Part shown: positions 5,564-44,850 of the stretch, one piece after another
How positions within the stretch are numbered: position 1 is the stretch's first letter
Layout: each line of letters opens with the position of its first letter
The notes under the pieces: model-generated
Database searches by the model: none
What the model was told of the DNA's origin: nothing
What the model saw: only the letters and a program-made list of their open reading frames with translations
Virus record (IMG/VR): IMGVR_UViG_3300030419_008158
Span: 124,001-188,000 of that record
DNA length: 64,000 nt
Reading direction: 5' to 3' (one strand)
Position numbers and translations under genes: made by a program

Positions 5564-5578
5564 TTGACACCTTCGAAA

Positions 5579-9157: not shown

Positions 9158-9849
9158 TAGTAGTGCTCCTTGTACTGATGTACTATTGGAAAATTCTCCC
9201 AATTAGCATGCAATCTTTTTTGGGCTAACCATTCTGCATTTTCATAAGGCTTGCCCATTCTATTGAAATGAAATACTAAATTTAGGTCTATTGCTCCAAT
9301 TCCACGAAAGTCTGGATGCTGCAGCAAGTCATCATGATGATTCTCTGTAAACGACAATGCGCTAGAAAATACTTCTAAAAAATCACTCGAACTGTAGACG
9401 CTACCTCCGCAGGCACCGTACCTTCCATGACTCACCCAGCCTTCATTTTCTCTAATAATATTGATAGCAATATTAGGTAGCGGATTGATAGTTGCGCCCT
9501 TGAAGCTAAAATCGTCAAATTCAACTTTATCTTGAACCAAAACGTCGTCTTCCAAAATCATGATATAGTCAGTATTTGCATTTTCTACAGCCAATTTGTG
9601 ACGTCTCCATCCCTCGATCATTCTACTGGAATCATAATACGTGTCATCATTTTTGCCAAAAATATTGTGCAAGTGAACAAAATCAGTATTGTATCTACTT
9701 GCTAAATCACTAAAATCTTCGCCGCCATCAGATATCATCATGATCGGGCTGTCTGGATAGTATTTTCTAAATCTCTCAAGAACAAAGCTAGTCGCCTTTT
9801 TATTATTGTAGACTTGATAATATGCACCCAGTGTTTTAGAGGTATTCAT
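9157..9849 (-). CDS. Putative GT-A glycosyltransferase
   Basis: ISDGG and MILEDDV (DxD-like) motifs; glycan-island context. Confidence 0.55.
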   Translation of the reverse strand: MNTSKTLGAYYQVYNNKKATSFVLERFRKYYPDSPIMMISDGGEDFSDLASRYNTDFVHLHNIFGKNDDTYYDSSRMIEGWRRHKLAVENANTDYIMILEDDVLVQDKVEFDDFSFKGATINPLPNIAINIIRENEGWVSHGRYGACGGSVYSSSDFLEVFSSALSFTENHHDDLLQHPDFRGIGAIDLNLVFHFNRMGKPYENAEWLAQKRLHANWENFPIVHQYKEHY

Positions 9850-9850
9850 T

Positions 9851-11428
9851 TTATCTTTCCTTTGAAAATAAGTAGTTTTCCACTACTACGTAGTCTAACT
9901 CAGTATTATCGAGCACATGAAGAGCATCTGCTATTGTCGTTAAGATTGGAAACCCCCTGATATTGAAAGAAGTATTTAGAAGAACATTAGTATCTGATAT
10001 CTTTCCAAACTCTGTCAACAAATCATAAAATACTTCATGGTCTTCTCTGGTAACAGTCTGGAGTCTAGAAGTTCCGTCAATATGGGTTATTGCTGGAAGA
10101 ACTTCTTGATATTCTTTTTTGACAACAGGTGCGAAACTCATGTACTCCATACTGTCAAAACTACTGGACTCAAAATAATCGCCGGCTTCTTCTTTTTTGC
10201 AAAATGGAGCAAAGGGACGATACCATTCTCTAAATTTTACTTTTGCATTGAGACTGTCTTTCATTTTCTGGTAAGAAGGGTCACATACAATGCTTCTGTT
10301 CCCAAGAGCTCTGGGACCAACTTCAGAGTCGCCATAAACTAGACCTACAATTTTTCCGCTTTTTATGAGCTGCGCGACTTCAGCTAAGTTGACCTTCTTG
10401 GCACCTCTTTCTGAGACGTGCTTTTCTAGATCTTGCTTATCAAGCAATGGTATTCCACTATAGGTCACAATCGGTCTGTTTTCAGGCGGTGATACCAAGA
10501 ATGCAGCCCCAAGAGATAAGCCGCAGTCGTTTGGATTGGGTGGTACGTAAGGTGTCACACCAAATTGATTTTTTACTCTCTCATTCAACAAGACATTTAA
10601 AGATCCGCCACCGGTAAAACATATTCCTGCACTTGGAAATCTGTCTTTCCATCTGGCAAAGACATCTATGAAGGCTTCTTCGTACCCTTTTTGAAGAGTT
10701 GCAGCAAGATCATAAGCTGACTGTCCCGAAAATTTTGCATTAGACATCGGATTTTTCCAGGGATCGTCAGTATTTAAAAGATCTAAACCTGTTAGCTCAG
10801 AAAGTTTTTTATAGTCTCGATCAAAGAAAAATTCCTTAAAGTGGGGAACTAGTTCATCTTTAGCTTCTCCGTAAGCACACAGTCCCATGGATTTTCCTGG
10901 GAGTGCCAACTGGTGGCGACTATTATCACTTATTTCATGCAAAATTGAAGCACCTAGCATGTAACCACCGCCAAAGTCAGACTCTACTTTCTCCAAAAGA
11001 TTGATCTGGTTTTCTTTTGCGTGATAAACATTAAAAAAACCGTCATTTCCTCCACCATCAAAAGAAAATATTAGTGCTTCTTTATGAGGTGAAAGATAGT
11101 AAGCACAGCTAGCGTGACACTCATGGTGATTCTTTACCATGCCGATACTATTTGTCTCAAACACCTCTGCCAGAACGCTCAACGGATTGATTCCTCCGTC
11201 TGCTGTTACAATTACATGATCTGGATTGGAGAAATCCCAGAATTTTTTTGCAATGTCTTTACACTGCAAAAGAATGTTTCTTATAGCCTCTAGGTCGTTA
11301 TCAACGTGCAACCTAAAATATCTCTTTCGAACTAATCTCTCGAGCTCAATAATATGAATTTTTTGCTTTTCTGTGTCGTAGAATGTTATATTCGAATCGT
11401 GGCCGGCAAAAATATTTACTAATTTCAT
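9851..11428 (-). CDS. O-carbamoyltransferase (NodU/CmcH family)
   Basis: HHECHAS, FDGGG, GPRALGNRSI, KFREWYRPFAP, LLNTSFN. Confidence 0.92.
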   Translation of the reverse strand: MKLVNIFAGHDSNITFYDTEKQKIHIIELERLVRKRYFRLHVDNDLEAIRNILLQCKDIAKKFWDFSNPDHVIVTADGGINPLSVLAEVFETNSIGMVKNHHECHASCAYYLSPHKEALIFSFDGGGNDGFFNVYHAKENQINLLEKVESDFGGGYMLGASILHEISDNSRHQLALPGKSMGLCAYGEAKDELVPHFKEFFFDRDYKKLSELTGLDLLNTDDPWKNPMSNAKFSGQSAYDLAATLQKGYEEAFIDVFARWKDRFPSAGICFTGGGSLNVLLNERVKNQFGVTPYVPPNPNDCGLSLGAAFLVSPPENRPIVTYSGIPLLDKQDLEKHVSERGAKKVNLAEVAQLIKSGKIVGLVYGDSEVGPRALGNRSIVCDPSYQKMKDSLNAKVKFREWYRPFAPFCKKEEAGDYFESSSFDSMEYMSFAPVVKKEYQEVLPAITHIDGTSRLQTVTREDHEVFYDLLTEFGKISDTNVLLNTSFNIRGFPILTTIADALHVLDNTELDYVVVENYLFSKER

Positions 11429-11454: not shown

Positions 11455-12450
11455 TCAGTAGTTTTCGTTTGCTATGTCAACTAGCGACTTTATTCTATTG
11501 ACATAGGTGTGTTTTTCTTTTACTAGCTTTTGTGCATTTTTTATCATCTGCCAGTTCTCTCTATTTGATATACAGTTATGCAAAAGCTCATCTGTTTTTG
11601 GGTTGAATATACAGTTTCCTTCTAGCTCTTTGTATACTGCTTTTGAATTTGTCATTCCTAAGTGACCAAAACTAATGTTCTTAAAGATTCTTTCAGGAAC
11701 CATGTTAGTTCGAACATGTTCGGGCCCTCTTATTTCAACCCCTAAATAAGATTTCTTTGTCGTTTCCACTAGCTTGTCTGTTGTCACGGGAGACCGCCAG
11801 GGATCGTTGTGGTAAAACTCTATTCCTAGTTTTTGACATTCCTCAACAAAGGGCTTAAAGTTGGAAAAATTTTCATGCTGTCCCGCATTTGAAATGGAAC
11901 CTAGAAAATAAATTTTCTTTTCGTCTCGCTCTAAGTAGATATCGCTTTCTAGTATCTCATGAGGCAGAAGGTTGGTTGCCCAATTTATGTAAAGTCGATC
12001 AAAATCATCTATTTCATAAGAGACATATTGATTTGAAATTGTTACTTTTTGATCTTTCTTTTTCTCCATAAGACAGGAGGGACCGATGCTTATTGTGTCT
12101 AAGCTGGAGACGCTATAGTCGTGTATGTGATCCTTATGGTTGTCAACAGGCATTCTAACGTCTACGAACTTCTTAACACCCGCGTTTATGTACTTTGCCG
12201 GATCCGGGCAGTACCAGACAAAATAGCAGCTCGAATCATTCAGGGGAAGTTTTTTATCAGCAAATCCCTCACATAAAAACATTGTATTTGAAAAATCAAA
12301 ATCTTCAGGGAAGTCTTCATCATGAAACCAATAGACATCATAGCCCAAATAACTAAAAGCTTTTTGATAAGCTTCCCACCCATAAGATGCAGTATGAGAA
12401 TAGAGCGGATAACCCCATATTACAACTTTGTCGTAAGCAAAATTTTTCAT
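11455..12450 (-). CDS. Putative glycosyltransferase-like protein
   Basis: C-terminal RIFKNISFG...VKEKHTYVNRI resembles CgeB-like GT-B tails; island context. Weak call. Confidence 0.45.
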   Translation of the reverse strand: MKNFAYDKVVIWGYPLYSHTASYGWEAYQKAFSYLGYDVYWFHDEDFPEDFDFSNTMFLCEGFADKKLPLNDSSCYFVWYCPDPAKYINAGVKKFVDVRMPVDNHKDHIHDYSVSSLDTISIGPSCLMEKKKDQKVTISNQYVSYEIDDFDRLYINWATNLLPHEILESDIYLERDEKKIYFLGSISNAGQHENFSNFKPFVEECQKLGIEFYHNDPWRSPVTTDKLVETTKKSYLGVEIRGPEHVRTNMVPERIFKNISFGHLGMTNSKAVYKELEGNCIFNPKTDELLHNCISNRENWQMIKNAQKLVKEKHTYVNRIKSLVDIANENY

Positions 12451-13127
12451 TCTTGACTCGCATGGTTCATCTTGATATCTTCGAATCCTTCTCCGAAATT
12501 TCTCACAATTTCATTTTTTATCCCAACACGAATTTTATTTTTGTCTCTAAGCGTCAATGTTCTTCTTCCTACTTCTTCTAAGCCCAAAAGACCTTCTTTT
12601 CCTTTTCGTATGTCTGATTCCATGTCCCAACACTCGCCGTTTATCTTGTAGAGTCGATCAACATAAGGTTGTATTCCCTCATACTTGTCGAGTTCTCCCT
12701 TTAGCTGTGCCAGCTGGATAGATAAATCTTCCCCTTCAACTCTTTCATGTTTTAGTTTGCATATTGTGTAGCGATCGGCAACTTCTGCAATCGGATACGG
12801 TAGCGGAGACTTTTTCGGGTTCAACCAATCTGCTACATTTACTGCCTTGTCATCGATGTAAAAGTCTGCTTTAGGCTTTTTGTTCATTATGAGCTGGTGG
12901 TATTTTATTCCAAAATCTTTCATTTGATTTTCTGTAAACTCAGTGTAATCTTTCTTGCTAGTCATACCCCTGGCAGTCATCAAAATAATTTTATGACCTT
13001 TGTCATATAAAGAGTTTGCTTTGGATACTGCTCTTGACACAGGCAAGGCAGCGCTATAATCACCTTGCGTGTCAGTCACTAGTGTTCCATCAATATCAAA
13101 AACATAAGTTTTTATTTTTTCAACCAT
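12447..13127 (-). CDS. HAD phosphatase (capsule-biosynthesis type) fused to a helical DUF6165-like domain
   Basis: YVFDIDGTL...MTARG...KPKADFYIDDKAV, then PIAEVADRYTICKLK...LYKINGECWDME...KNKIRVGIKNEI. Confidence 0.7.
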   Translation of the reverse strand: MVEKIKTYVFDIDGTLVTDTQGDYSAALPVSRAVSKANSLYDKGHKIILMTARGMTSKKDYTEFTENQMKDFGIKYHQLIMNKKPKADFYIDDKAVNVADWLNPKKSPLPYPIAEVADRYTICKLKHERVEGEDLSIQLAQLKGELDKYEGIQPYVDRLYKINGECWDMESDIRKGKEGLLGLEEVGRRTLTLRDKNKIRVGIKNEIVRNFGEGFEDIKMNHASQE

Positions 13128-13774
13128 TCTGAAAAATCCTTCATGAAGCCGTCTATTGATTTTCTGGTTCCTTCATGTTCTAATCCCATTTCAATAATTG
13201 CCGGGCTGGCAGTAGCAATATGAGCCCCACAATCCCAAGATGTTACAATATCTTCTGGCTTTCGAATACTGCCGGCGATGATTTCACAGTCCAAATTATG
13301 ATATTCAATAAACCTTCTAGTCGTTTCAAGGTGCGACTTTACATCTTCTCCCGAATCGATTGCGCGCCTATAAAAAAGAGAAACATATCTGGCACCGCAT
13401 TTTGCAGCAGCAGTCAGCTGATTTGATGTGTAGCCGCACGTTGCATTAATTTTTATTCCCTCACTGGCAAGCCTAGAAATGACAGGCAAATATTTCATTT
13501 CTATTGGAACTTTTACACTGAGGTTTTCTGAAACGTTTTTTACTAGATTGACTGCATCAGTGTAGACATCTTCCGGGTCTAGAGAGAAAACTTCTACACT
13601 CAGCGGTAAATTACTTTGATTGCAGACTTTAGAAATCTCTCTACACATTTCTAAGAAGTTTCCTTTCGGCTCTTTAGCAAAAAGACTTGGGTTGGTAGTT
13701 ACACCATCTATTAGATTACAAGAAATCAAATTTTTTATCTGGCCTAAGTTTGCAGTATCAGCAAAAACTTTCAT
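13112..13774 (-). CDS. tal: Transaldolase / fructose-6-phosphate aldolase family
   Basis: FADTA, GVTTNPS, VKVP (Schiff-base Lys), INAT, YVSLF..R, IIAGSIR. Confidence 0.88.
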   Translation of the reverse strand: MKVFADTANLGQIKNLISCNLIDGVTTNPSLFAKEPKGNFLEMCREISKVCNQSNLPLSVEVFSLDPEDVYTDAVNLVKNVSENLSVKVPIEMKYLPVISRLASEGIKINATCGYTSNQLTAAAKCGARYVSLFYRRAIDSGEDVKSHLETTRRFIEYHNLDCEIIAGSIRKPEDIVTSWDCGAHIATASPAIIEMGLEHEGTRKSIDGFMKDFSEWLKK

Positions 13775-14193
13775 GTGTCCTCCTTGTGAACATATTTTAG
13801 TCCATCCTCAACAATATGTGAATCTCCATCGTCATCTTTTGTGGAGACTTCAATAATAACACAGTCAACAGGCGCAATTCTCATATGCATTAGACCAGGC
13901 TCAATATGAAAAACGTCACCCTGTTTTAACATTACAGATTTATTTTGTGCTCTACCGATTCGAACGCCTACCTTAAGTTGGCCACTCTCAATATAGTACA
14001 TTTCTTTCTTTTTAATGTGAAACTCCATGCTGCTCTGGGAGCCGGCTTTCATAAAAATTCTTTTGACAGAATGCACATCATCTTCAAATATTGTTGTCAT
14101 ATGACCCCAGTACTTTTCGATATGCTTTACCGGTGAAGTAGCTTGAGGCAAATCTTGTCGACCATATTTGATGTCAGTTCCCGTCTTGTCCAT
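13771..14193 (-). CDS. Cupin (sugar isomerase/epimerase-like)
   Basis: EKYWG, SMEFHIKKKE, IEPGLMHMR, IIEVST. Start placed at ATG 14193 by the GGAG SD. Confidence 0.75.
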   Translation of the reverse strand: MDKTGTDIKYGRQDLPQATSPVKHIEKYWGHMTTIFEDDVHSVKRIFMKAGSQSSMEFHIKKKEMYYIESGQLKVGVRIGRAQNKSVMLKQGDVFHIEPGLMHMRIAPVDCVIIEVSTKDDDGDSHIVEDGLKYVHKEDT

Positions 14194-14857
14194 ACCTTCT
14201 CCCTTTGCCATGCTTCCTGTCCCAGTGAAAACTAGAAATAGTCGAAGATATCTTCATTCTTCCACCCAAAGATTCTGTAATATATGCCATTTTAGCTATC
14301 TCCTCTAAAGCAATGGCAACATCGACAGCATTTTCTTTTTCTGACCACGTGAAGGGTCCATGACTGCTTAGAAGAATTGCACCGCTATCTTTAGAAGTTA
14401 AGTTTTTTGCAATATAAACTCCCAACTCTTTCTCATGCTGGTCTCCTGCTTCATAAATTGAAATAGGAGAATTTATGACCCTAACTGTGTCAACAAACAT
14501 GTCTGCATGGGTTGTTCCATACATTTGTATGTCTCTATTGGCTTGTGCAAAAGATGTCGCATATGTAGAATGATTATGGCAAATTGAACTTATGTGTGTC
14601 ATTGCTCTGTAAATCTCGACATGTATTGGTGTGTCAATAGAACACTTAAGACCCGATAGTTGATTGTAGCTCATATCAATAACTGCTATATCGCTTTCGC
14701 TCATTTTTTCAACATCTACACCACTGGGCTTTATATACACCAAAGAATTTTCTCTGTCTATGCAGCTATAATTTCCCCATGTTAGCTTTGCTAAATTTTC
14801 ACTTTTTATTTTTCTATTTTCTCTCAAACAAAGGGCAAGAAAATTCTTACTTGACAT
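14174..14857 (-). CDS. Class II aldolase/epimerase (AraD-like)
   Basis: WGNYS, IKPSG, SIDTPIH, ICHNHS, GTTHAD, LLSSHGPF. Confidence 0.85.
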   Translation of the reverse strand: MSSKNFLALCLRENRKIKSENLAKLTWGNYSCIDRENSLVYIKPSGVDVEKMSESDIAVIDMSYNQLSGLKCSIDTPIHVEIYRAMTHISSICHNHSTYATSFAQANRDIQMYGTTHADMFVDTVRVINSPISIYEAGDQHEKELGVYIAKNLTSKDSGAILLSSHGPFTWSEKENAVDVAIALEEIAKMAYITESLGGRMKISSTISSFHWDRKHGKGRRYGQDGN

Positions 14858-15668
14858 TTTCAGCCCTCCTTAGATAATTGTAAGCTGTGGTGTCTCCGAA
14901 CACGATAGCGTCATGCAAGTTTTTTCCATTGTATGTTGCACAAAAACCTGCAAAAAAGGCATCTCCTGCTCCGTGATAATCGCTAACGTCATCTATCGCC
15001 CTTGGTTTGTGAACAATTTTTTTATTTTCAGAACATGCAATAATTTCATCTTTGCCATCCGTTGCAACACACACATCAAACATATTTTGTCTCAGTATGT
15101 GCTCAATATCTTTTTTTGGTACTTCGTTCTCATTGCCAACAAAACAGTGAAACCCAAGATATTTTTTAATACTTTCGCTGGAATCGCTTACTTGCATTTG
15201 ACATATTGTTTTATTCTTGGGTAATATTTTCAATATTTGATCACTAACAACACCCAATCGATAATCAGAAACCACTATCAAATCATATGTGGGCATCTTT
15301 CTATGCGATGTCCAAACAGTAGTTGGTTCTATGGGCATACAGTCATTTATTTGCAAGTATTTGTAAGAAGCATCTTTTACAAGATAGAACCTTTCTTTGA
15401 TTTGATCTCTTTTTCCAGAGCAAATTACATTAATTCCTGGATTTGTTTCCAAAATCTTGCGATGTTCATCTGAAACTGAGGTTACAAAGTCTACATCGCA
15501 ACCTAGTTGCGACATTTTTATTGCTACATTTGCGGCGCCGCCGAGAGATTGATATTCTCTAATTTTTTGACATTTTATCGTAGGTGTTTCTAGACTAAAA
15601 CCCGTAGGTTGTAGATACACATACTTGTCTATGATTGTGTCACCTATCAGAAGGACTAATTTTTTCAT
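14847..15668 (-). CDS. PfkB-family sugar kinase (HldE kinase-domain-like)
   Basis: LIGDTIIDKY, GGAANVA, DYRLG, GAGDAFFAG. Confidence 0.8.
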   Translation of the reverse strand: MKKLVLLIGDTIIDKYVYLQPTGFSLETPTIKCQKIREYQSLGGAANVAIKMSQLGCDVDFVTSVSDEHRKILETNPGINVICSGKRDQIKERFYLVKDASYKYLQINDCMPIEPTTVWTSHRKMPTYDLIVVSDYRLGVVSDQILKILPKNKTICQMQVSDSSESIKKYLGFHCFVGNENEVPKKDIEHILRQNMFDVCVATDGKDEIIACSENKKIVHKPRAIDDVSDYHGAGDAFFAGFCATYNGKNLHDAIVFGDTTAYNYLRRAENVK

Positions 15669-16521
15669 GTGTTCTTAGCTCTCGTATTCTTCTGAGTTGG
15701 TCTGTTGTAGAAAAACCAGATGTTAGTGGCAGTGTCATGATCTTTACTTGATCTGGAATTTTGTCTCTTTTTCTAACTTCTTCTGCAGTCCACTCCCCTC
15801 CTTTTACAACAATTTCTGGCACTAGGCTTTCAATAATATTTCGTAGCTCTTCCTCTGTGTTAAAAACTATTACTTCATCGACATTTTTCATCGACAGCAG
15901 TATTTCTCTTCTAAAGCTTTGATTATTAATAGGTCTGTCTGGGCCCTTCAAGTGTTTTACTCTATCATCAGAGTCTATTGCAATTATAAGTTTTCCACCA
16001 CAACTCTTGGCGAAATTTAGCAAGTCCAAATGACCCTTGTGAAGCACATCAAATACACCGTTTGCAATTACTAAACCAGGAACAGGATCTATTTTTGCTA
16101 TTCGCTTATTGTGACGACCTTCTCCGTACGGAGTTTTTAGCCATGTTTTGACAATATCGATATTTTTTTTCTCACTATTAATCCAAGCTCCCAAGCAAAG
16201 GACATTTGAATCATTATGCTCCCTAGTTTTTTCTGATGTTGTTAGATTGTGGACTAAAGATGCTCTGGCTCCTGTAATTCTATTAGCAACAATAGACATT
16301 CCTACTCCAGTACCACAAATCAATATTCCTTTATTGTTCGGATTGTCTGAGACGATTTGTGCTACTTGGTATGCATAATCTACATAGTCAACTTTTCCAT
16401 GCTCATCATATGGTCCCAAGTCTATCGGAAGAAATCCTAGGGATTTCAAATTTTCAACGACACGCTTTTTTAGCTTTACACCGTTGTGATCAGATGCTAT
16501 TACAACTGTTTTTTCGCTCAT
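15640..16521 (-). CDS. rpiB: RpiB sugar-phosphate isomerase fused to an HldE-type nucleotidyltransferase domain
   Basis: ASDHNG, ILICGTGVGMSIVANR, HNDSNVLCLG, then NGVFDVLHKGH, GPDRP, VKGGEW. Confidence 0.88.
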   Translation of the reverse strand: MSEKTVVIASDHNGVKLKKRVVENLKSLGFLPIDLGPYDEHGKVDYVDYAYQVAQIVSDNPNNKGILICGTGVGMSIVANRITGARASLVHNLTTSEKTREHNDSNVLCLGAWINSEKKNIDIVKTWLKTPYGEGRHNKRIAKIDPVPGLVIANGVFDVLHKGHLDLLNFAKSCGGKLIIAIDSDDRVKHLKGPDRPINNQSFRREILLSMKNVDEVIVFNTEEELRNIIESLVPEIVVKGGEWTAEEVRKRDKIPDQVKIMTLPLTSGFSTTDQLRRIRELRTHEKISPSDR

Positions 16522-17289
16522 CTAAAACCTCGGAAGTGTAACATTGATTGGAAGATTGACACACTGAATTCCATGCCGGGCCAAATTTATTGCCAAAGCC
16601 ATCTCATTACAAATTGGGTGAGAATTTGGAGTTTTTTCAATGTCTGAATAGATCTTCTTGTAAGATAAGAATGTAGTACCATAAATCATCATATTTTCAA
16701 AACTTGAAAAATTTAACCAATCTGAAATGTGTCCATATTTTTTGGACATGTCGATTGCGTACATGTAGCTTTGATCAAATTGAGACATAATCAGGGGTGT
16801 CATTACATTAATGTCAAATCGACACCTTATCACGGCGTCATACTCCTGACCTGTTTTGAGACAGTGATGATACATCATTTGTGTCGACTCGTAAATAGAT
16901 GACCACATGCTAAGATTATTTGAAAGAATAAACTTTTCGTAGTCTCTATGTGTCATTCCTGCTTCTTCAGCTTCTTTTTCTGTTCCCGGAGAATAAACAT
17001 CAAATGTTCTTTTCAAAGACACACTTGGCATTAGAAATTTTCTAGTGGGTTCAACTTTACTGGCTAAGGGTGCATAGAGTTGTATAGCTTTTTCGTGAGA
17101 ATTAGAATCTATTCTCTTTTTCTTCCACCCACCATCTCCTCCGTATTTATAAGGCTCATTTTCATCTTCATAAGACCAGGCATGTAAAAATATATCTGGA
17201 TTGTTCGGTTCAATAATGTTTTTTAGAATGCTTTCGTAGCACTCATCAAGAAATCTAGGTTGGCCGGACATGCACAATGCAACTTTCAC
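16522..17289 (-). CDS. Hypothetical glycan-associated protein
   Basis: MKVALCMSGQPR start, YDAVIRCRFD, SDWLNF; type commonly seen in polysaccharide loci; function unassigned. Confidence 0.55.
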   Translation of the reverse strand: MKVALCMSGQPRFLDECYESILKNIIEPNNPDIFLHAWSYEDENEPYKYGGDGGWKKKRIDSNSHEKAIQLYAPLASKVEPTRKFLMPSVSLKRTFDVYSPGTEKEAEEAGMTHRDYEKFILSNNLSMWSSIYESTQMMYHHCLKTGQEYDAVIRCRFDINVMTPLIMSQFDQSYMYAIDMSKKYGHISDWLNFSSFENMMIYGTTFLSYKKIYSDIEKTPNSHPICNEMALAINLARHGIQCVNLPINVTLPRF

Positions 17290-18305
17290 TTTGTCTCCTT
17301 TGAGTCTATCTGTGATTTTGCATATTCCACGACTGCTTCAACACCCTTGACAAGACCAACTTTTGTCTTCCAACCTAAAATATTTTCTACCTTTTTAGAA
17401 GACCCTAAGCTAAATTTGTTCACCTCAGAAACTACTCTTTCTTGCGGAAGAGGTAGAGGGCCACTAAATAGTTCTGGGTATTTGTCCCAAAACTTTTCTG
17501 CACTTTCAAAAGATGGCTCAATATAAGTTCCGAAACTTTCACAAAATATTTTGTATATTTCTTTTACAGAATATGCCGTGCCGGACGAAACATTGAAGAT
17601 TTCTCCCGGAACATCACTTCGCTTTAAACACATTTCTACCAAATCAACCAGATCGCTTATATAGACATAGTCTCTCTTTTGATCTCCGCTGGAGAAGAAT
17701 GTGGGCTTTTCACCCTGAAGGAGGCATTTTGTAATGTATCCCATTAGTGGGGGATGTTTTCTTCTAAAATCTTGATGTGGTCCGTAAACATTAAAGAATC
17801 TAAGGGTAATAACATCCATTTTGTATGTGGAAGCATATGCTTTACACAGTGATTCACACTGTAATTTACTGACTGCGTAAACGAGGTCAGGATTGGACTC
17901 GAGTCTATCTTCCACAAAGGGAGTAATTTTACAATTTTCATAAATTGCACTAGTGCTGGCAAAAATAAACTTCTTAATTCCCTTTTTTCTGCATGCTTCT
18001 AGCATATTGGCAGTTCCAGTAACGTTATTATCGATTGTCTTGCTAGGGTTTAGCTGACAATCTGGCAAAGGGGCAATTCCCGCCATGTGTATTACAGCAT
18101 CAACTCCCTCTAAGTGCTGTCCTATGTCTTTGTCTCTAACGTCTGCATGTATAAACTCACCTACTTTTTTACCGTCGACTGTGAGATTATCTTCATGGCC
18201 ATAGCTCATATTATCTAAAAGGACAACGTAGTGTCCGTTTTCTTCAAGATGATGTCCTATTTGTGAACCAATAAATCCGGCTCCACCTGTTATAAGAATT
18301 TTCAC
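17286..18305 (-). CDS. NAD-dependent epimerase/dehydratase (extended SDR)
   Basis: GGAGFIGS, YAVSK, LRFFNVYGP, GDQKRDY. Confidence 0.9.
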   Translation of the reverse strand: MKILITGGAGFIGSQIGHHLEENGHYVVLLDNMSYGHEDNLTVDGKKVGEFIHADVRDKDIGQHLEGVDAVIHMAGIAPLPDCQLNPSKTIDNNVTGTANMLEACRKKGIKKFIFASTSAIYENCKITPFVEDRLESNPDLVYAVSKLQCESLCKAYASTYKMDVITLRFFNVYGPHQDFRRKHPPLMGYITKCLLQGEKPTFFSSGDQKRDYVYISDLVDLVEMCLKRSDVPGEIFNVSSGTAYSVKEIYKIFCESFGTYIEPSFESAEKFWDKYPELFSGPLPLPQERVVSEVNKFSLGSSKKVENILGWKTKVGLVKGVEAVVEYAKSQIDSKETK

Positions 18306-19375
18306 GTAATGTATTCTCCTAGAAGTTCATTTCTTTTTATTGATATTGATTGACAGGATGGGTGTGGGTTTGTTGGAGCAAAATCATTTATAATAATTCG
18401 TCTGCTGTGATTGCATCCTGAGATTATTTGTTTGTATTGAATATCATTATCTTTTAGTAATTGCCTAAACTCTAGAAGAAATTCTTCTGTTCTAGCTGTC
18501 ATAAAAATTATCTCATTCCCTTCCTTCGACAGCCTTTTGACAGTGTCAATATTTTCTTGAATGGGTTCAAAATAGTTTGACCAGTTATTTTTACCAAATC
18601 TTCCACTATTTTTCAAAAGAACACCATCAATATCAAAGATGTATGTTTTGTAACGCCCTAGTTCTTCATACCAATCTTCTTTAGTGCCCCAGTCTATAAA
18701 TTCATCTGCCTCGACATATTCAAAAATAGCCTCTTCACATACTATTAGATAAGAAATTACATGACTAACATATACTTCACTTAGATTTTTGTAGACTTCA
18801 TGATCTCGTATTTTTTCATACGCTCGACAAAATTCATTGGCATCCGATGAATATACACCCAAACAAATAATGTTAGAAACCATCTCTTTTTCGATGATGT
18901 CTGTTATAATGTCGTCGTCATTTTTAATGATAAAGCTTTTTTGCTGCACTCTATCAATATTTGATTTAGCAGATACACTCAAACCAACGATATGATTTGA
19001 GCTACTAGGAAGCTTTGAACGAACAAGACAGTCGGTATCTTTTATAGTTATTTTTCCTGTCACAGAAAGCTGCTTTAAAGTCTCGTATACAGTCTCAGAT
19101 GCAGAGGATGTCGGATTTTTTAGAGATAGAACTTCTACTTTTTTTCCAAAAACCTGATTTAGAATCGTATCAGCATCATACTTTTCACAATGATCATTTA
19201 GGACTGTGACTATAATTCTGTCAAATGAATTTGGATTCTCTTCAAGAAAAGACGAAATCACCTTGTCAATCATAAGTCGGCCATCTGGGTGTGTCAAAAG
19301 CCACTTGGGTCTCATGCCGGGATATCTACTTGATTTTCCAGCTGCTGGTACTATTAATGTTGATTTATTTTTCAA
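18302..19375 (-). CDS. Sugar nucleotidyltransferase fused to a C-terminal HAD phosphatase
   Basis: VPAAGKSSRYP...PKW N-terminal motif and DWGT; then YIFDIDGVL...MTAR...IIINDF. Confidence 0.75.
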   Translation of the reverse strand: MKNKSTLIVPAAGKSSRYPGMRPKWLLTHPDGRLMIDKVISSFLEENPNSFDRIIVTVLNDHCEKYDADTILNQVFGKKVEVLSLKNPTSSASETVYETLKQLSVTGKITIKDTDCLVRSKLPSSSNHIVGLSVSAKSNIDRVQQKSFIIKNDDDIITDIIEKEMVSNIICLGVYSSDANEFCRAYEKIRDHEVYKNLSEVYVSHVISYLIVCEEAIFEYVEADEFIDWGTKEDWYEELGRYKTYIFDIDGVLLKNSGRFGKNNWSNYFEPIQENIDTVKRLSKEGNEIIFMTARTEEFLLEFRQLLKDNDIQYKQIISGCNHSRRIIINDFAPTNPHPSCQSISIKRNELLGEYIT

Positions 19376-20162
19376 AATGATTTTCCATATGAGCTAATCT
19401 TTCTTCTAGAATCTTTAAAGTATGTGTATCTGCGTATGGGATTATTCTTATGATATTCATAACCAAAAGTCTTTTGACTGCTTCCATTTCGTCATTATTT
19501 AGTCTTTCACACATTTTATTATAGAGAAACATGCACTTTATTACAGGCGGAGATGTGCTATTTCTCCACGACCACATCGATATGATGTCTTGAAAAACTT
19601 TGGCGCAGTCAATGTATTTTGTCTCAGCAAATGAATCTAAAAAATCGATAAGATAGACATCAGAGTTGTAGATAATAATATTTTCAAATGTTAGGTCGCC
19701 ATGACACATCGATGATGTCATTTTTGTCCAATCATAGTCTAAACAATATTGAAAGTATTTTTCAAATTTTGAAGAGACATGACTTCTGAGGTCATCTACT
19801 TTTTTCTCAACTAACGATGCTAGATTACTTTTATCTTCTTTGCGAAATAAAAAATTAGTAATTTTTTCAAAAATATGAAGAATATCATTTGAACTACTAG
19901 AGGAAACATAGTTGCTAAATGTACAGCCACTTATGTACTCCATGTCGAAATAAAACATGTTGTCATGTGTGCCAAAGTTATATATTTTTGGCGTTTTTAG
20001 GACAGAATCTCTAAAAAGAAGCTGTTTTTTCATTTGACTTTTTAGTCGATTGTTGTATTCAATACTAGGTGATATTTTTCTTACAAACTTTCTTTCTAAT
20101 TCTTTGTCAATATGAAGCTCAACTTTGCAACCTGAGTGTCCTTTGAGTTTCTTTACAAACAT
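19365..20162 (-). CDS. APH/choline-kinase-like phosphotransferase
   Basis: KGHSGC, VRKIS, HGDLTFEN, YLIDFLD. Confidence 0.75.
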   Translation of the reverse strand: MFVKKLKGHSGCKVELHIDKELERKFVRKISPSIEYNNRLKSQMKKQLLFRDSVLKTPKIYNFGTHDNMFYFDMEYISGCTFSNYVSSSSSNDILHIFEKITNFLFRKEDKSNLASLVEKKVDDLRSHVSSKFEKYFQYCLDYDWTKMTSSMCHGDLTFENIIIYNSDVYLIDFLDSFAETKYIDCAKVFQDIISMWSWRNSTSPPVIKCMFLYNKMCERLNNDEMEAVKRLLVMNIIRIIPYADTHTLKILEERLAHMENHFEK

Positions 20163-20187: not shown

Positions 20188-20994
20188 CTAGCGAAATATT
20201 TGATACATTATTTCAAAATTTCTATGCTGGTGTGCATTACACTGAAGAACTAGAAATGAGGTTGGTATTTTCTTTGCTAAATACCCAATAGCTAGCTGTT
20301 CATTATTCATTCTTCCAGCGCCAATCATCAAGTTTTGTAAAACATCATCACACCATGCTCTAAGAGCAATGCTTCCGAATTTATCTACTCCGAAAAGGCC
20401 GCCCCACATAAAAGATCTATTGTCCCAAAAATAGTCTTCTGTCATATCTCCGTTGATAAGATCCGGATAGGGCGAAACATACATCTGATATAGTATTTTT
20501 GCTGTATGTTCTTTTATTTGATTTTCAAAAGTTGGTCCCGGTAAGGGTTGAGTAAAATCAATGTCAGGCGCGTGTCGAGAAATACCGGCGTCCATCCAGA
20601 AAAAATAGTCGCTATTAAAGTGATTCTCTAATGCAGCTCTTTCGACCCAAGCAAATTTAGAATATTGAATTATGGAGTAAAGACTAGTCTTGCATTCTAT
20701 CCTACCTGGATCTTTAATCCTGTCCTGGTATTCCTCGCTGGATAGAACTGCATCAATTTTTTCTTTCAAATGATAACACGGAACTTCATCAAGTTTTTGA
20801 TTGATTATTTTTGTTTCTCTACCAGGAGGTCTGTTTTCTTCAATAAACGAATTCAAACTCTCATCACAGTAGATAACCATCGGGGCACCCATTTTAAGAG
20901 TGTCCGCAAACCACTCATAATACTGCTCCATTCCGCGGCCGTCGACATCTTTTCTTCCAATATCAAATAAAGCTGTTACCACTGTTGCTTTCAT
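20188..20994 (-). CDS. HtrL/YibB (WlaTC)-like glycosyltransferase
   Basis: TVVTALFDIGR, YFFWMDAGI, GGLFG, NNEQ. Confidence 0.7.
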   Translation of the reverse strand: MKATVVTALFDIGRKDVDGRGMEQYYEWFADTLKMGAPMVIYCDESLNSFIEENRPPGRETKIINQKLDEVPCYHLKEKIDAVLSSEEYQDRIKDPGRIECKTSLYSIIQYSKFAWVERAALENHFNSDYFFWMDAGISRHAPDIDFTQPLPGPTFENQIKEHTAKILYQMYVSPYPDLINGDMTEDYFWDNRSFMWGGLFGVDKFGSIALRAWCDDVLQNLMIGAGRMNNEQLAIGYLAKKIPTSFLVLQCNAHQHRNFEIMYQIFR

Positions 20995-21950: not shown

Positions 21951-22672
21951 TTTACACCTGCGAATCTAGGGAATTCACTCATGTCTTTATGAAGATGAAC
22001 AAACTTAGTTGGATAGTTTTCTCTAATATTATTATAGCCATTTTGAGGCTGGGCATAGCCCGGATGAAGTGTTCTCACTAGACTGCTATTTTCTAAAAAG
22101 TATTTGTTTGTGTGTGATTCATCATGCCAAACTGCCACGATTTCGTCTTCTAAATCTTCATCCACTCTTCGCTCCAAAACACTTATCATTTCTAAAAACT
22201 CTAATGTCTTTCCGCCCCAAAAACACCCTTGCCTGTATTGAGATAGATCATATTGATCATCGTATATATTAGCTCGAGATCTAGTGTCGGTTTCGAACGC
22301 TCCAATTTTCCCCAAAAAACCTGGATGTTGCACACCAATCAAAGGCTCATTTCCAAAAAGATCGTCTGGGTCTACCTTCCCAACACACCACATGTCTGCG
22401 TCGACAAAAAAAGAATAATCAAATTTAGAAATTTGTTTTCTCATCTGATTCATGTACTTAAATCGATAGAGGGTAATATAAGGCCAACCCTGGTGATCTA
22501 TTTTCATGCACGTAACGTTTTCTTTATTGAATAATTCATAGTCAATATCGTCTGTGTACACAAAATAATGTTTCTCGATGCCTGGTAGAAAGTTCTTCTG
22601 TAGGCCTTCATAATAGCCCTCAAAAAAGCCTTTATATCTGCCAGTTCCGATAAAATTAATTGCTACTTTCAT
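21947..22672 (-). CDS. GT6 alpha-1,3-Gal/GalNAc transferase (ABO-transferase family)
   Basis: FIGTGRY, FVYTD, WPYITLYRF, FVDADM (DxD), QGCFWGG, WHDESHTNKY. Start moved to 22672 (ATGA overlap). Confidence 0.88.
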   Translation of the reverse strand: MKVAINFIGTGRYKGFFEGYYEGLQKNFLPGIEKHYFVYTDDIDYELFNKENVTCMKIDHQGWPYITLYRFKYMNQMRKQISKFDYSFFVDADMWCVGKVDPDDLFGNEPLIGVQHPGFLGKIGAFETDTRSRANIYDDQYDLSQYRQGCFWGGKTLEFLEMISVLERRVDEDLEDEIVAVWHDESHTNKYFLENSSLVRTLHPGYAQPQNGYNNIRENYPTKFVHLHKDMSEFPRFAGVK

Positions 22673-23436: not shown

Positions 23437-23437
23437 T

Positions 23438-30955: not shown

Positions 30956-30970
30956 TTTATCTCTCCAATG

Positions 30971-44797: not shown

Positions 44798-44850
44798 ATT
44801 ACAAATCTCCAGCGCCATGGCATCTTATAAAACATAGGAAGACGATAAAA

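What the first reader, a model, noticed from the sequence alone, without database searches (positions are those of the whole stretch)
12447..20162. Candidate GmhA-independent pathway to a nucleotide-activated heptose, octose or other rare sugar
Seen, contiguous: APH-like kinase, nucleotidyltransferase-HAD fusion, SDR epimerase, RpiB fused to an HldE-type nucleotidyltransferase, stand-alone HldE-type PfkB kinase, AraD-like epimerase, cupin, transaldolase and HAD phosphatase. No SIS-fold GmhA isomerase is in the window. Established: ADP/GDP-heptose synthesis runs isomerase, kinase, phosphatase, nucleotidyltransferase from sedoheptulose-7-P, and the lincosamide octose pathway starts with a transaldolase and follows the same logic. 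Inference: the transaldolase builds a C7/C8 ketose phosphate and the RpiB domain replaces GmhA, giving a possibly new sugar. The RpiB-nucleotidyltransferase fusion is the most diagnostic feature.
Basis: partly seen in the sequence, partly recalled or inferred. Interest (0 to 1): 0.72.

Follow-up and report, generated by a model that had tools for sequence, protein, structure and literature searches.

The report
Phage sugar-nucleotide cassette lacking GmhA
A marine jumbo phage carries a tightly packed six-gene cassette, shared with many ocean phages and two tiny-celled microbes, that probably builds an activated seven- or eight-carbon sugar by an uncharacterised route in which a small cupin protein, rather than the usual GmhA enzyme, does the key isomerisation.

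Summary
There is one extra unnamed ORF. No SIS/GmhA gene exists in the 284-kb phage genome.

The block is two modules. The conserved unit is six genes at 12447-16521: an RpiB::HldE-II-like nucleotidyltransferase fusion, a PfkB kinase, an AraD-type epimerase, a PMI-type cupin, a transaldolase and a small HAD phosphatase. All six occur together in 35 of 44 marine phage loci with enough flank. They also occur in a CPR bacterium and a Woesearchaeote. The four upstream genes (16522-20162) are specific to this lineage.

The claim that RpiB replaces GmhA is less likely. RpiB-less phage cassettes keep the cupin next to HldE-, GmhB- and HldD-like genes, and its model best matches type II phosphomannose isomerase domains. 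The fused RpiB domain has lost the pentose-size phosphate clamp (Arg113 to Trp), so its substrate is open.

The product is unknown: heptose, octose or a mannose-type sugar. The cassette appears uncharacterised and is mislabelled in phage databases. I rate it a new variant of a known pathway logic, of moderate to high interest.

The parts
15640..16521 (-). Fusion protein (293 aa): N-terminal RpiB/LacAB-family sugar-phosphate isomerase (about residues 1-147) and C-terminal HldE-domain-II-like nucleotidyltransferase (about residues 150-281)
   Evidence: Pfam PF02502 157 bits and PF01467 61 bits. NCBIfam NF004051 RpiB 168 bits (above cut-off) and rfaE_dom_II 117 bits (below the 181.5 cut-off). D11 H12 C69 T71 H102 N103 R136 H137 R140 are conserved, and so are the HxGH and STT motifs. 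Trp113 replaces the phosphate-clamp Arg.
14847..15668 (-). PfkB-family sugar(-phosphate) kinase, HldE-domain-I-like (273 aa)
   Evidence: Pfam PfkB 52 bits. The best NCBIfam match is rfaE_dom_I, 75.6 bits, well below its cut-off of 345. It aligns with Burkholderia heptose-7-P kinase 4e84, including the N-terminal GDxxxDxY motif and the GAGD motif.
14174..14857 (-). AraD-type class II aldolase-fold 4-epimerase (227 aa)
   Evidence: Pfam Aldolase_II 131 bits. NCBIfam AraD subfamily 197 bits (cut-off 257). It aligns with E. coli AraD 1jdi. The equivalents of N28, K42, S44, G45, S74, D76, H95, H97, D120, H171 and Y229 are kept; S75 is Ile/Val/Thr in all 7 cassette copies.
13771..14211 (-). Small metal-binding cupin of type II phosphomannose-isomerase type (146 aa). 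Proposed ketose-P/aldose-P isomerase doing GmhA's job
   Evidence: Pfam Cupin_1/Cupin_2 and MannoseP_isomer at 24.7 bits (cut-off 23.6). Family alignment: invariant K33 W35 G36 K50 S61 H65 K68 E70 H109 E121 D130. AF2 model pLDDT 87. The top 17 Swiss-Prot fold hits are the PMI cupin domains of ManC/XanB/AlgA. It co-occurs with HldE-like genes in RpiB-less cassettes.
13112..13774 (-). Short-type transaldolase (220 aa)
   Evidence: Pfam TAL_FSA 123 bits. It aligns with B. subtilis, T. maritima and T. acidophilum transaldolases, with the Schiff-base Lys, the catalytic Glu and the Phe (Tyr in FSA) conserved. It is only about 31% identical to the separate cyanophage talC that sits on the same contig in L148.
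12447..13127 (-). Small capless HAD phosphatase (N-terminal about 105 aa) with a lineage-specific C-terminal extension (226 aa in all)
   Evidence: DxDGT, TAR and K...DD motifs are present. Weak HAD-IIIA, EcbF-BcbF and PNKP-phosphatase hits. It is 42-47% identical to the 103-121-aa HADs that end the cassette elsewhere and 44% identical to S-SSM7 gp130. It matches phrog_1238, which is labelled 'phosphoheptose isomerase'.
16522..17289 (-). ORF of unknown function (255 aa).
   Evidence: phrog_13607, unknown function, 118 bits. Weak DUF7796 hit only. Conserved in the Tara relatives L156-L158 but not next to the cassette in other lineages.
17286..18305 (-). SDR nucleotide-sugar epimerase/dehydratase (339 aa), upstream module
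   Evidence: Pfam Epimerase 195 bits. NCBIfam GalE 155 bits and heptose 6-epimerase 143 bits, both below their cut-offs.
18302..19375 (-). Divergent nucleotidyltransferase fused to a HAD phosphatase (357 aa by ORF; 337 aa in relatives), upstream module
   Evidence: Weak NTP_transf_3 and HAD hits. The Atlas places it in a phage-enriched NTase+HAD family, with some relatives fused to APH kinases.
19365..20162 (-). Kinase of protein-kinase/APH fold (265 aa), a candidate anomeric sugar kinase, upstream module
   Evidence: Weak APH(3'), Bud32/RIO and CotS hits. A faint APH hit is on record for the relatives.

Best explanation
Window 12447-16521 (minus strand) is a six-gene cassette that makes a nucleotide-activated sugar for the surrounding glycosyltransferase island. 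It uses neither GmhA nor a phosphomutase. The sugar is probably ADP-linked, beta-anomeric and of manno type.

Proposed order of steps:
1. The transaldolase moves a C3 unit from fructose-6-P or sedoheptulose-7-P onto an aldose phosphate. This gives a C7 or C8 ketose phosphate with 3S,4R configuration. The RpiB-like domain supplies or tailors a partner sugar phosphate, and where present the AraD-type 4-epimerase does so too.
2. The PMI-type cupin turns the ketose phosphate into the aldose phosphate. This is the reaction GmhA performs in the classical pathway.
3. The HldE-I-like PfkB kinase phosphorylates O-1.
4. The small HAD removes the terminal phosphate.
5. The HldE-II-like domain fused to RpiB makes the NDP-sugar.

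Shown here: domain identities, intact catalytic residues, conserved gene order, and the absence of SIS domains. Inferred: the substrates, the order of steps and the product. I lean towards a heptose or an octose homologue of ADP-heptose but cannot choose between them.

The four upstream genes (16522-20162) form a separate module specific to this lineage. Its logic looks like a second mutase-free activation route: phosphatase, anomeric kinase, nucleotidyltransferase, then SDR tailoring.
For: - Domain calls and catalytic residues support each assignment.
- Gene order RpiB::NTase, PfkB, AraD, cupin, TAL, HAD recurs in cyanomyovirus-like contigs, whose neighbours include PTOX, gnd, zwf, talC and pstS. 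It also recurs in IMG/VR contigs, a Taylorbacteria MAG and a Woesearchaeota MAG.
- Of 44 fusion-bearing viral loci with at least 4.5 kb downstream, 35 hold all six genes.
- Minimal cassettes without RpiB, TAL or AraD keep NTase, PfkB, HAD and this cupin (S-SSM7; L138-L144). Others are HldE-like fusion, HldD-like SDR, cupin and GmhB-like HAD (L102).
- No SIS_2 domain is found in any genome tested that carries a cassette.
- The cupin has E/H-x-H...E...H metal ligands. Of 17 family members, 7 hit PF01050 (MannoseP_isomer) and 5 hit the D-lyxose isomerase family; the RmlC-type epimerase family was not among the 12 families reported. The fold is nearest to type II PMI domains.
- A GT9 (heptosyltransferase-family) gene lies divergently next to the fusion gene in the CPR locus.
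- Several phages carry the extended and the minimal cassette in tandem, which argues for two different products.
- In L148 the cassette transaldolase coexists with a distinct talC.
- The window cassette sits among at least 10 glycosyltransferase genes.
Against: - There is no biochemical evidence for any member.
- The kinase, NTase, HAD, AraD and TAL matches are all below NCBIfam equivalog cut-offs, so specificities are unknown.
- The cupin fold alone does not prove isomerase activity. CapF, whose cupin domain I recall to be a nucleotide-sugar epimerase, is also among the PDB fold hits.
- The cupin could be an ordinary phosphomannose isomerase, as a cyanophage paper reads it (PMC9602691).
- The AraD-like protein keeps nearly the whole pentulose-5-P phosphate pocket. 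That fits L-ribulose-5-P better than a C7 or C8 ketose.
- The role of the RpiB-like domain is unresolved, since Trp113 replaces the clamp Arg.
- No GT9 gene is present in this phage.
- The host could supply GmhA.
Confidence: 0.45

Rival explanations
1. The RpiB-like domain is itself the GmhA replacement: it isomerises the transaldolase-derived C7/C8 ketose phosphate. The cupin does something else, for example C2 epimerisation through the ketose, anomer handling, or NDP-sugar tailoring.
For: - The fused RpiB domain differs from housekeeping RpiB at the residue that limits chain length. Trp113 is present in at least 90% of 125 fusion sequences, whereas stand-alone paralogues in the same CPR and DPANN genomes keep Arg113.
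- LacAB, which takes hexose phosphates, also lacks that Arg and has a longer pocket (PMC3755991).
- Fusion to the last enzyme of the pathway argues for a dedicated role.
- AraD-type 4-epimerisation of a transaldolase product would give 3S,4S, the configuration of LacAB's substrate tagatose-6-P. This point is my own reasoning.
Against: - Cassettes without RpiB still lack SIS and always keep the cupin.
- As far as I know, characterised RpiB/LacAB substrates have erythro C3/C4, while transaldolase products are threo (3S,4R).
- AraD, which could fix that mismatch, is missing from 4 of 44 cassettes.
- The cupin resembles PMI, a ketose-P/aldose-P isomerase.
Confidence: 0.2
2. Ordinary product. [quoted passage not shown] RpiB and the transaldolase only push pentose-phosphate-pathway carbon towards S7P/F6P, in the way cyanophage talC is thought to act.
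For: - The canonical transaldolase reaction (F6P + E4P) gives S7P directly, and its catalytic residues are canonical.
- The RpiB domain scores above the NCBIfam RpiB subfamily cut-off.
- In cyanophage-like contigs the cassette lies near zwf, gnd and talC.
- Cyanophage cupins of this type have been read as monofunctional type II MPI lying near GDP-mannose-using genes (PMC9602691).
- This phage has GDP-mannose 4,6-dehydratase and GT11 genes but no ManB or ManC.
Against: - It gives no role to the AraD-type epimerase.
- A second transaldolase beside talC on one contig would be redundant.
- Tandem extended and minimal cassettes in one phage argue for different products.
- The fused RpiB has lost the R5P phosphate clamp, and a housekeeping RpiB coexists with it in the cellular carriers.
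- As I understand these enzymes, an HldE-type route yields a beta-linked ADP-type sugar, not the GDP-alpha-mannose that the dehydratase needs.
Confidence: 0.2
3. Pentofuranose donor. AraD makes L-ribulose-5-P from xylulose-5-P. The RpiB/LacAB-like domain makes L-arabinose-5-P, or ribose-5-P from Ru5P. Kinase, HAD and NTase then give NDP-L-arabinofuranose or NDP-ribofuranose. The transaldolase and cupin serve a parallel branch.
For: - The AraD phosphate pocket and catalytic residues are almost fully canonical.
- L-ribulose-5-P has the same 3S,4S configuration as tagatose-6-P, the LacAB substrate (my reasoning plus PMC3755991).
- A 5-phosphate forces a furanose, which the kinase/phosphatase logic would lock in.
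Against: - It leaves two strictly co-conserved genes, the transaldolase and the cupin, without a role in the main line.
- Cassettes without AraD exist.
- The kinase and NTase are closest to heptose enzymes.
Confidence: 0.08
4. Not a glycan pathway. The genes are auxiliary central-carbon or nucleotide (NAD/ADP-ribose-type) metabolism genes that merely sit in a glycosyltransferase island.
For: - RpiB, the transaldolase and AraD are pentose-phosphate-type enzymes.
- The NTase fold is shared with NMNAT and PPAT.
- NUDIX or NAD-synthase-like genes lie near some cassettes.
Against: - The NTase matches rfaE_dom_II far better than NMNAT or PPAT.
- The genes form a tight operon with an HldE-like kinase and a HAD.
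- Glycosyltransferase neighbours are found in phage, CPR and DPANN loci, including a GT9.
Confidence: 0.05

Closest known systems
[quoted passage not shown]
   Same: It has the same chemical logic and the same folds for three steps. These are a PfkB anomeric kinase (best match rfaE_dom_I), a HAD-IIIA-like phosphatase, and a cytidylyltransferase-fold NTase (best match rfaE_dom_II). HldD-like SDRs accompany related phage cassettes.
   Different: There is no SIS-fold GmhA anywhere; a PMI-type cupin is the likely isomerase. The kinase and NTase are split, and the NTase is fused to an RpiB-like domain. A transaldolase and an AraD-type epimerase are added. All scores are below equivalog cut-offs.
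Lincosamide GDP-octose pathway (LmbR transaldolase, LmbN isomerase, LmbP kinase, LmbK phosphatase, LmbO guanylyltransferase). Named from my own knowledge, not retrieved here
   Same: A transaldolase sits in front of an isomerase, kinase, phosphatase and NTase series. Ribose-5-P plus a C3 unit giving octulose-8-P would explain why an RpiB-type domain and a transaldolase always travel together.
   Different: As far as I know, LmbN is SIS-type, LmbP is a GHMP kinase and LmbO is an NTP_transferase-fold enzyme. Here the folds are cupin, PfkB and cytidylyltransferase-like. The context is phage, CPR and DPANN glycan islands, not an antibiotic cluster. I did not run a sequence comparison with the Lmb proteins.
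Type II phosphomannose isomerase cupin (C-terminal domain of ManC/AlgA/XanB) and the monofunctional cyanophage 'MPI' of S-SCSM1 (PMC9602691)
   Same: The fold is the nearest match (TM about 0.68, 20-23% identity). The metal-ligand pattern and the PF01050 hit agree. PMI and GmhA catalyse stereochemically equivalent ketose-to-manno-aldose isomerisations.
   Different: The cupin stands alone at 113-180 aa. It is linked to HldE-like kinase, NTase and HAD genes rather than to a guanylyltransferase domain. Its substrate is untested.
RpiB/LacAB sugar-phosphate isomerases
   Same: The full catalytic set is present: Asp-His, Cys-x-Thr, His-Asn and the Arg-His-x-x-Arg phosphate site. The score is above the RpiB subfamily cut-off.
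   Different: Trp stands at the position of the phosphate-clamp Arg113, and Val replaces Pro in the DYP motif. Housekeeping paralogues in the same genomes keep both residues. The domain is fused to an NTase.
L-ribulose-5-phosphate 4-epimerase AraD/UlaF/SgbE
   Same: The Zn ligands, Asp120, the C-terminal Tyr229 and five of the six phosphate-pocket residues are conserved.
   Different: Ser75 is hydrophobic or Thr in all cassette copies. Scores are below the AraD cut-offs. The context is biosynthetic, and no arabinose or ascorbate catabolism genes are nearby.
Mutase-free salvage-type activation, e.g. MurNAc recycling MupP (HAD) / AmgK (APH-fold anomeric kinase) / MurU (NTase). Relevant to the upstream module and cited from my own knowledge
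   Same: The same three activities are encoded at 18302-20162: a HAD phosphatase, an APH-fold kinase and an NTase.
   Different: NTase and HAD are fused. The matches are very weak, the sugar is unknown, and no test of relatedness to AmgK or MurU was made.

Membership tests
ADP-heptose pathway (GmhA/HldE/GmhB) | SIS-fold sedoheptulose-7-P isomerase GmhA | tested here: not met
   No PF13580 or PF01380 match in the 284-kb genome, while the control genomes do match. None either in three other viral genomes at least 94% complete that carry the cassette, or in S-SSM7.
ADP-heptose pathway (GmhA/HldE/GmhB) | HldE domain I heptose-7-P kinase (TIGR02198 equivalog) | tested here: inconclusive
   It is the best NCBIfam match, but at 75.6 bits against a cut-off of 345. 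The N-terminal GDxxxDxY and GAGD motifs align with HldA 4e84.
ADP-heptose pathway (GmhA/HldE/GmhB) | HldE domain II heptose-1-P adenylyltransferase (TIGR02199 equivalog) | tested here: inconclusive
   117 bits against a cut-off of 181.5. PF01467 is above its cut-off. The HxGH and STT motifs are invariant. Nucleotide specificity is unknown.
ADP-heptose pathway (GmhA/HldE/GmhB) | GmhB-type HAD-IIIA bisphosphate phosphatase | tested here: inconclusive
   HAD-IIIA scores 25 bits against a cut-off of 44.6. The DxDGT nucleophile motif is present. The related L102 cassette has a clearer PNK3P/GmhB-like HAD.
ADP-heptose pathway (GmhA/HldE/GmhB) | Substrate sedoheptulose-7-P and product ADP-heptose | not testable with these tools
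   This needs enzymology and LC-MS.
Lincosamide-type NDP-octose pathway | Transaldolase that uses ribose-5-P as acceptor to give octulose-8-P | not testable with these tools
   A catalytically intact transaldolase is present, and it always co-occurs with the RpiB-like domain. Its acceptor specificity is unknown.
Lincosamide-type NDP-octose pathway | Homology of the isomerase, kinase and NTase to LmbN, LmbP and LmbO | not tested
   No Lmb sequences were available through the tools. From my knowledge their folds (SIS, GHMP, NTP_transferase) differ from those found here (cupin or RpiB, PfkB, cytidylyltransferase-like).
Ribose-5-phosphate isomerase B | Catalytic Asp/His, Cys-x-Thr and His-Asn, and a family score above cut-off | tested here: met
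   NF004051 scores 168 bits (cut-off 135) and TIGR00689 166 bits (cut-off 88). The residues are conserved in 125 sequences. The rpiB equivalog TIGR01120 scores 133.9 against 138.65, just below.
Ribose-5-phosphate isomerase B | Pentose-size phosphate clamp (Arg113 of Mt/Ld/Ct RpiB, or Arg40 of the E. coli type) | tested here: not met
   Trp113 is present in at least 90% of fusion sequences, and the Arg40-equivalent position is Ser or Lys and not conserved. Housekeeping paralogues in the same genomes have Arg. The role of Arg113 is taken from PMC3755991 and PMC4783025; the Arg40-type clamp of the E. coli enzyme is from my own knowledge.
L-ribulose-5-P 4-epimerase (AraD) | Zn-binding His x3, acid/base Asp120 and Tyr229, and the phosphate pocket | tested here: met
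   All are conserved except Ser75, which is Ile/Val/Thr. However, the scores are below the equivalog and subfamily cut-offs, so the substrate is not established.
Type II phosphomannose isomerase cupin | PF01050 match, metal ligands and fold | tested here: met
   PF01050 scores 24.7 bits against 23.6, which is marginal. It is hit by 7 of 17 family members. The E/H-x-H...E...H ligands are present. The top 17 Swiss-Prot fold hits are PMI domains. Activity was not tested.
Transaldolase (as opposed to fructose-6-P aldolase) | Schiff-base Lys, catalytic Glu (Gln in FSA) and Phe (Tyr in FSA) | tested here: met
   The alignment to 3r8r, 1vpx and 3s0c-type chains shows Lys, Glu and Phe. The roles of these residues are from my knowledge of TalB, TacTal and FSA. 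TIGR00875 scores 145 bits against a cut-off of 246.

The most novel reading that the evidence does not exclude
The extended cassette makes an ADP-activated octose, a one-carbon-longer homologue of ADP-heptose. It would do so by LmbR-like condensation of a pentose-5-phosphate with a C3 unit, followed by cupin isomerisation and HldE-type activation. That would be the first octose pathway devoted to glycans rather than to an antibiotic. It would be spread across abundant marine phages, CPR bacteria and DPANN archaea. The same small cupin would also be a general non-orthologous replacement for GmhA.
Probability: 0.2. Interest if true: 0.85.

Novelty: new variant of a known kind. Interest (0 to 1): 0.62.

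Why it matters
The fusion protein alone has about 1550 database clusters, and the cupin family has more than 7000. Most come from ocean metagenomes. This is therefore a common, unassigned piece of marine virus metabolism and not a curiosity of one genome.

If the cupin does GmhA's job, heptose-type sugars could be made where genome annotation currently says they cannot. That includes phages, CPR bacteria and DPANN archaea. The database labels 'phosphoheptose isomerase' (on a HAD phosphatase) and 'cysteine dioxygenase' (on the cupin) would need correcting.

If the transaldolase arm yields a new C7 or C8 sugar, that would define a new nucleotide sugar and a handle on what these phages put on the host surface or on their own virions. 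That bears on receptor masking and superinfection exclusion.

The whole idea can be tested directly with six small soluble proteins and LC-MS.

Tried and rejected
- A blastn search of the 7.7-kb block against 50,697 phage records found nothing.
- A tblastn search with the fusion found no full-length match in isolated phages. The two 'Listeria phage' records covering 86% turned out to be two separate adjacent ORFs on unverified contigs, not a fusion.
- Nine literature searches found no paper on this cassette, on a cupin heptose isomerase, or on an RpiB::NTase fusion. Terms covered cyanophage/heptose/transaldolase; RpiB/HldE; phosphoheptose isomerase; cupin plus sedoheptulose-7-P; octulose-8-P; phage-encoded ADP-heptose; RpiB/AraD in cyanophages; cyanophage nucleotide-sugar/LPS genes; and RpiB phosphate-clamp residues. 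The useful returns were a paper reading cyanophage cupins as MPI and structural papers on the RpiB/LacAB phosphate clamp.
- The sequence profile of the cupin against the PDB gave only generic cupins. The fold search against Swiss-Prot models was more informative.
I rebuilt the alignment without that row.
- I looked for a GT9 heptosyltransferase in the phage and found none.
- I asked whether this is a cyanophage. There is no psbA, and the PIN-PhoH gene is nearest to jumbo-phage homologues at about 32% identity. The host remains unknown.
- I looked for RNA evidence. Only marine DNA metagenomes hold the sequence, so I laid no reads.
- I considered that the stand-alone NTase at 49005-49475 might mark a second minimal cassette. 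Its neighbour is a ClpP-like prohead protease, so I rejected that.
- I rejected the FSA-type aldolase reading for the TAL gene, because Glu and Phe are conserved.
- I judged an RmlC-type epimerase reading for the cupin less likely, because the metal ligands are present and PF00908 was not among the families reported.

Full report
**What is there**

The window is bases 124001-188000 of a 284,429-bp IMG/VR virus record that CheckV rates complete. Almost all genes lie on the minus strand.

From 12447 to 20162 there are ten abutting or overlapping ORFs.
- a weakly APH/Bud32-like kinase (19365-20162);
- a divergent nucleotidyltransferase::HAD fusion (18302-19375);
- an SDR epimerase/dehydratase (17286-18305);
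- an RpiB domain fused to an HldE-domain-II-like nucleotidyltransferase (15640-16521);
- a PfkB kinase whose best match is HldE domain I (14847-15668);
- an AraD-type class II aldolase-fold protein (14174-14857);
- a cupin (13771-14211);
- a short transaldolase (13112-13774);
- a HAD phosphatase (12447-13127).

One 255-aa ORF of unknown function (16522-17289) was not mentioned. No SIS or SIS_2 domain occurs in the window or in the rest of the genome, while the control genomes give hits.

The block lies in a very large glycan island. The island holds GT2, GT4, GT6, GT11 and HtrL/YibB-like genes, a carbamoyltransferase, a radical-SAM enzyme, a methyltransferase, GDP-mannose 4,6-dehydratase and further SDRs. 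It sits next to giant tail-fibre-like genes.

The phage has no psbA. Its sequence is found only in marine metagenomes. Tara Oceans contigs carry the same island in the same order at about 90% protein identity.

**Two modules, not one**

I compared loci fetched with the fusion protein from public genomes, IMG/VR and assembled metagenomes.

Only the six genes at 12447-16521 travel together. The order RpiB::NTase, PfkB, AraD-like, cupin, transaldolase, small HAD is the same in three settings:
- cyanomyovirus-like contigs, with PTOX, gnd, zwf, talC and pstS nearby;
- other IMG/VR contigs;
- a Woesearchaeota MAG, which has all six genes in this order.

A Candidatus Taylorbacteria MAG carries the same gene types rearranged, with other HAD-family genes.

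A second scan with an alignment of fusion proteins returned 52 viral loci, of which 51 carry the full fusion and one matches only the RpiB half. Of the 44 fusion-bearing loci with at least 4.5 kb downstream:
- 35 have all six genes;
- 5 lack only a detectable HAD;
- 4 lack only the AraD-like gene.

The four upstream genes of the window (255-aa ORF, SDR, NTase::HAD, APH-like kinase) are kept only in the close Tara relatives.

The fusion architecture is common. There are about 1550 database clusters, and all 120 best carry both domains. Several were seen on tens to hundreds of contigs.

**State of the enzymes**

- *Transaldolase.* It aligns over its full length with solved short transaldolases. 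It keeps the Schiff-base Lys, the catalytic Glu (Gln in fructose-6-P aldolase) and the Phe (Tyr in FSA). It also keeps the Arg/Ser phosphate site (residue roles are from my knowledge). It should therefore be a true transaldolase. In L148 it coexists with a distinct talC that is only about 31% identical.
- *AraD-like protein.* It keeps the three Zn histidines, Asp120, the C-terminal Tyr229 and five of the six phosphate-pocket residues of E. coli AraD. Ser75 is Ile/Val/Thr in all seven cassette copies examined. It is an epimerase-type rather than an aldolase-type member. Its pocket still looks sized for a pentulose-5-phosphate.
- *PfkB protein.* It has the GDxxxDxY and GAGD motifs and aligns with Burkholderia heptose-7-P kinase.
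- *HAD.* It has DxDGT, TAR and K...DD motifs. Only its first 105 or so residues match the 103-121-aa HADs of other cassettes.
- *NTase domain.* It has invariant HxGH and STT motifs. It is much closer to rfaE_dom_II than to glycerol-3-P cytidylyltransferase or PPAT.

**The RpiB domain**

It keeps every catalytic residue, and it keeps the Arg-His-x-x-Arg phosphate site.

However, at least 90% of 125 fusion sequences have Trp at position 113. Trypanosomatid, mycobacterial and clostridial RpiBs have Arg113 there.

A structural paper describes Arg113 as the residue that closes the pentose-sized tunnel. It is absent from the hexose-phosphate isomerase LacAB, whose pocket is 3 Å longer (PMC3755991; see also PMC4783025).

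The alternative clamp position, Arg40 of the E. coli type, is not conserved either.

The Taylorbacteria and Woesearchaeota genomes each also encode a stand-alone RpiB. Those copies keep Arg113 and the DYP motif, whereas their fused paralogues have Trp and DYV.

The fused domain is therefore a dedicated, altered paralogue. What it acts on is open.

**Which protein replaces GmhA**

Many phage contigs carry smaller cassettes without RpiB, transaldolase or AraD. These always keep this cupin family.
- Synechococcus phage S-SSM7 has NTase, PfkB, a 111-aa HAD and a 133-aa cupin. The HAD is annotated 'phosphoheptose isomerase' and is 44% identical to the window's HAD. The cupin is annotated 'cysteine dioxygenase' and is 32% identical to the window's cupin.
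- A large group of T4-like contigs has a PfkB::NTase fusion, an HldD-like SDR, the cupin and a GmhB-like HAD. This is the complete ADP-L,D-heptose gene set except that a cupin stands where GmhA should be.

No genome tested that carries a cassette has a SIS_2 domain. That covers three viral genomes at least 94% complete and the complete S-SSM7 genome.

The cupin family has invariant KxWG, three invariant lysines and an E/H-x-H...E...H metal-ligand pattern. Of 17 members, 7 hit the type II PMI model and 5 the D-lyxose isomerase model. The RmlC-type epimerase model was not among the 12 families reported.

An AlphaFold2 model (pLDDT 87) finds the PMI cupin domains of ManC, XanB and AlgA as its 17 best Swiss-Prot matches. 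PDB hits are more generic and include CapF, lyxose isomerases and archaeal PMIs.

PMI (F6P to mannose-6-P) and GmhA (S7P to glycero-manno-heptose-7-P) perform the same stereochemical step. The cupin is therefore the best candidate for the missing isomerase. This is inference, not proof. It could also be a plain PMI, which is how a cyanophage paper reads such genes (PMC9602691).

**How it most likely works**

- The minimal set (cupin, PfkB, HAD, NTase) would convert a central ketose phosphate (S7P or F6P) into an NDP-aldose. It would do so through the 1,n-bisphosphate, without GmhA and without a mutase.
- The extended set adds a transaldolase and an RpiB-like domain, which always occur together, and usually an AraD-type epimerase. 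Several phages carry extended and minimal sets in tandem (L184, L201, L203). This argues that the extended set makes a different sugar.
- The simplest chemistry that uses a transaldolase together with a ribose-phosphate-type isomerase joins a pentose-5-phosphate to a C3 unit, giving an octulose-8-phosphate. This is the lincosamide LmbR logic, which I cite from my own knowledge. The cupin would then give a manno-type octose phosphate for HldE-type activation.
- Alternatively the transaldolase makes S7P, and the epimerase and RpiB-like domain change its configuration to give an epimeric heptose.
- A GT9 (heptosyltransferase-family) gene beside the fusion gene in the CPR locus fits an ADP-heptose-like donor. 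This phage has no GT9.

I cannot decide between C7 and C8. I also cannot place the RpiB-like and AraD-like steps with confidence.

**The upstream module**

Genes 16522-20162 encode a HAD phosphatase, an APH-fold kinase, a nucleotidyltransferase and an SDR. This is the logic of a salvage-type, mutase-free activation: dephosphorylate, phosphorylate at the anomeric carbon, then activate. The NTase::HAD family is phage-enriched, and some relatives are fused to APH kinases.

The phage has GDP-mannose 4,6-dehydratase and a GT11 fucosyltransferase-family gene, but no recognisable ManB or ManC. This module may therefore feed a GDP-hexose branch. I did not test that idea.

**Comparison with known systems, and novelty**

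The cassette works like the ADP-heptose pathway, and possibly like the lincosamide octose pathway, but it is not a member of either. The defining SIS isomerase is absent. All enzyme matches fall below equivalog thresholds. The added transaldolase, RpiB-like and AraD-like arm has no described counterpart in glycan biosynthesis that I could find in nine literature searches.

I classify it as a new variant of a known kind of pathway. Interest is moderate to high because it is abundant, unassigned, mislabelled in phage databases, and directly testable in vitro.

Noticed in passing
window 12447-13127 and 13771-14211; L152 11052-11766 (S-SSM7 gp130, gp131): Database labels look wrong. The DxDGT HAD phosphatase family is called 'phosphoheptose isomerase' (phrog_1238, RefSeq S-SSM7). 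The PMI-like cupin is called 'cysteine dioxygenase' (phrog_7851, RefSeq).
   Followed up: yes
proteins P0011, P0012, P0019 (metagenomic relatives of window 15640-16521): Some fusion variants carry two nucleotidyltransferase domains: RpiB-NT-NT (464 and 441 aa) or NT-RpiB-NT (469 aa).
   Followed up: partly
L184 10694-12200; L201 and L203 downstream of the cassette; L186, L189, L195: Some phage contigs carry a second, minimal set (stand-alone NTase, PfkB, small cupin) or an extra small cupin directly after the extended cassette.
   Followed up: partly
L180, L181, L204, L205: Four cassettes lack the AraD-like gene but are otherwise complete and contiguous, so the epimerase is an optional step.
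   Followed up: partly
L001 7887-8633 (-) and protein P0197: Bicupin forms exist, with two tandem cupin domains. The second domain is up to 54% identical to the window's cupin.
   Followed up: no
window 42866-47321: A PrkA AAA kinase, a DUF444 protein and a SpoVR-like protein lie in a row. This triad is better known from bacterial stress and sporulation loci and is here encoded by a phage.
   Followed up: no
window 27698-38041: Two giant ORFs (1085 and 2356 aa) have distinctly higher GC (about 0.46 against 0.37). The larger ends in an endosialidase-type tailspike domain. They are probably host-recognition fibres placed next to the glycan island.
   Followed up: no
window 4622-7485, 22669-23469: GDP-mannose 4,6-dehydratase (426 bits), two further SDRs and a GT11 fucosyltransferase-family gene are present. 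The genome has no recognisable phosphomannomutase or NTP_transferase-type GDP-mannose pyrophosphorylase.
   Followed up: partly
window 8096-11428: A NodU/CmcH-type carbamoyltransferase (525 aa) and a radical-SAM protein lie within the glycan island. A similar carbamoyltransferase sits beside the minimal cassettes of S-SSM7 and L102.
   Followed up: no
window 20188-20994: This is an HtrL/YibB-family protein (TIGR02192, 85 bits, below cut-off). As I recall, the E. coli homologue of unknown function lies in the LPS core locus next to hldD. Here it directly follows the sugar-activation genes.
   Followed up: no
window 49005-49475: A second, stand-alone cytidylyltransferase-like protein (156 aa; similar scores to TagD and rfaE_dom_II) lies next to a ClpP-like prohead protease. 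It is not part of a sugar cassette.
   Followed up: partly
window 38743-40044: A PIN domain is fused to a PhoH-like ATPase. The nearest phage homologues are in jumbo Bacillus and Arthrobacter phages at about 32% identity.
   Followed up: no
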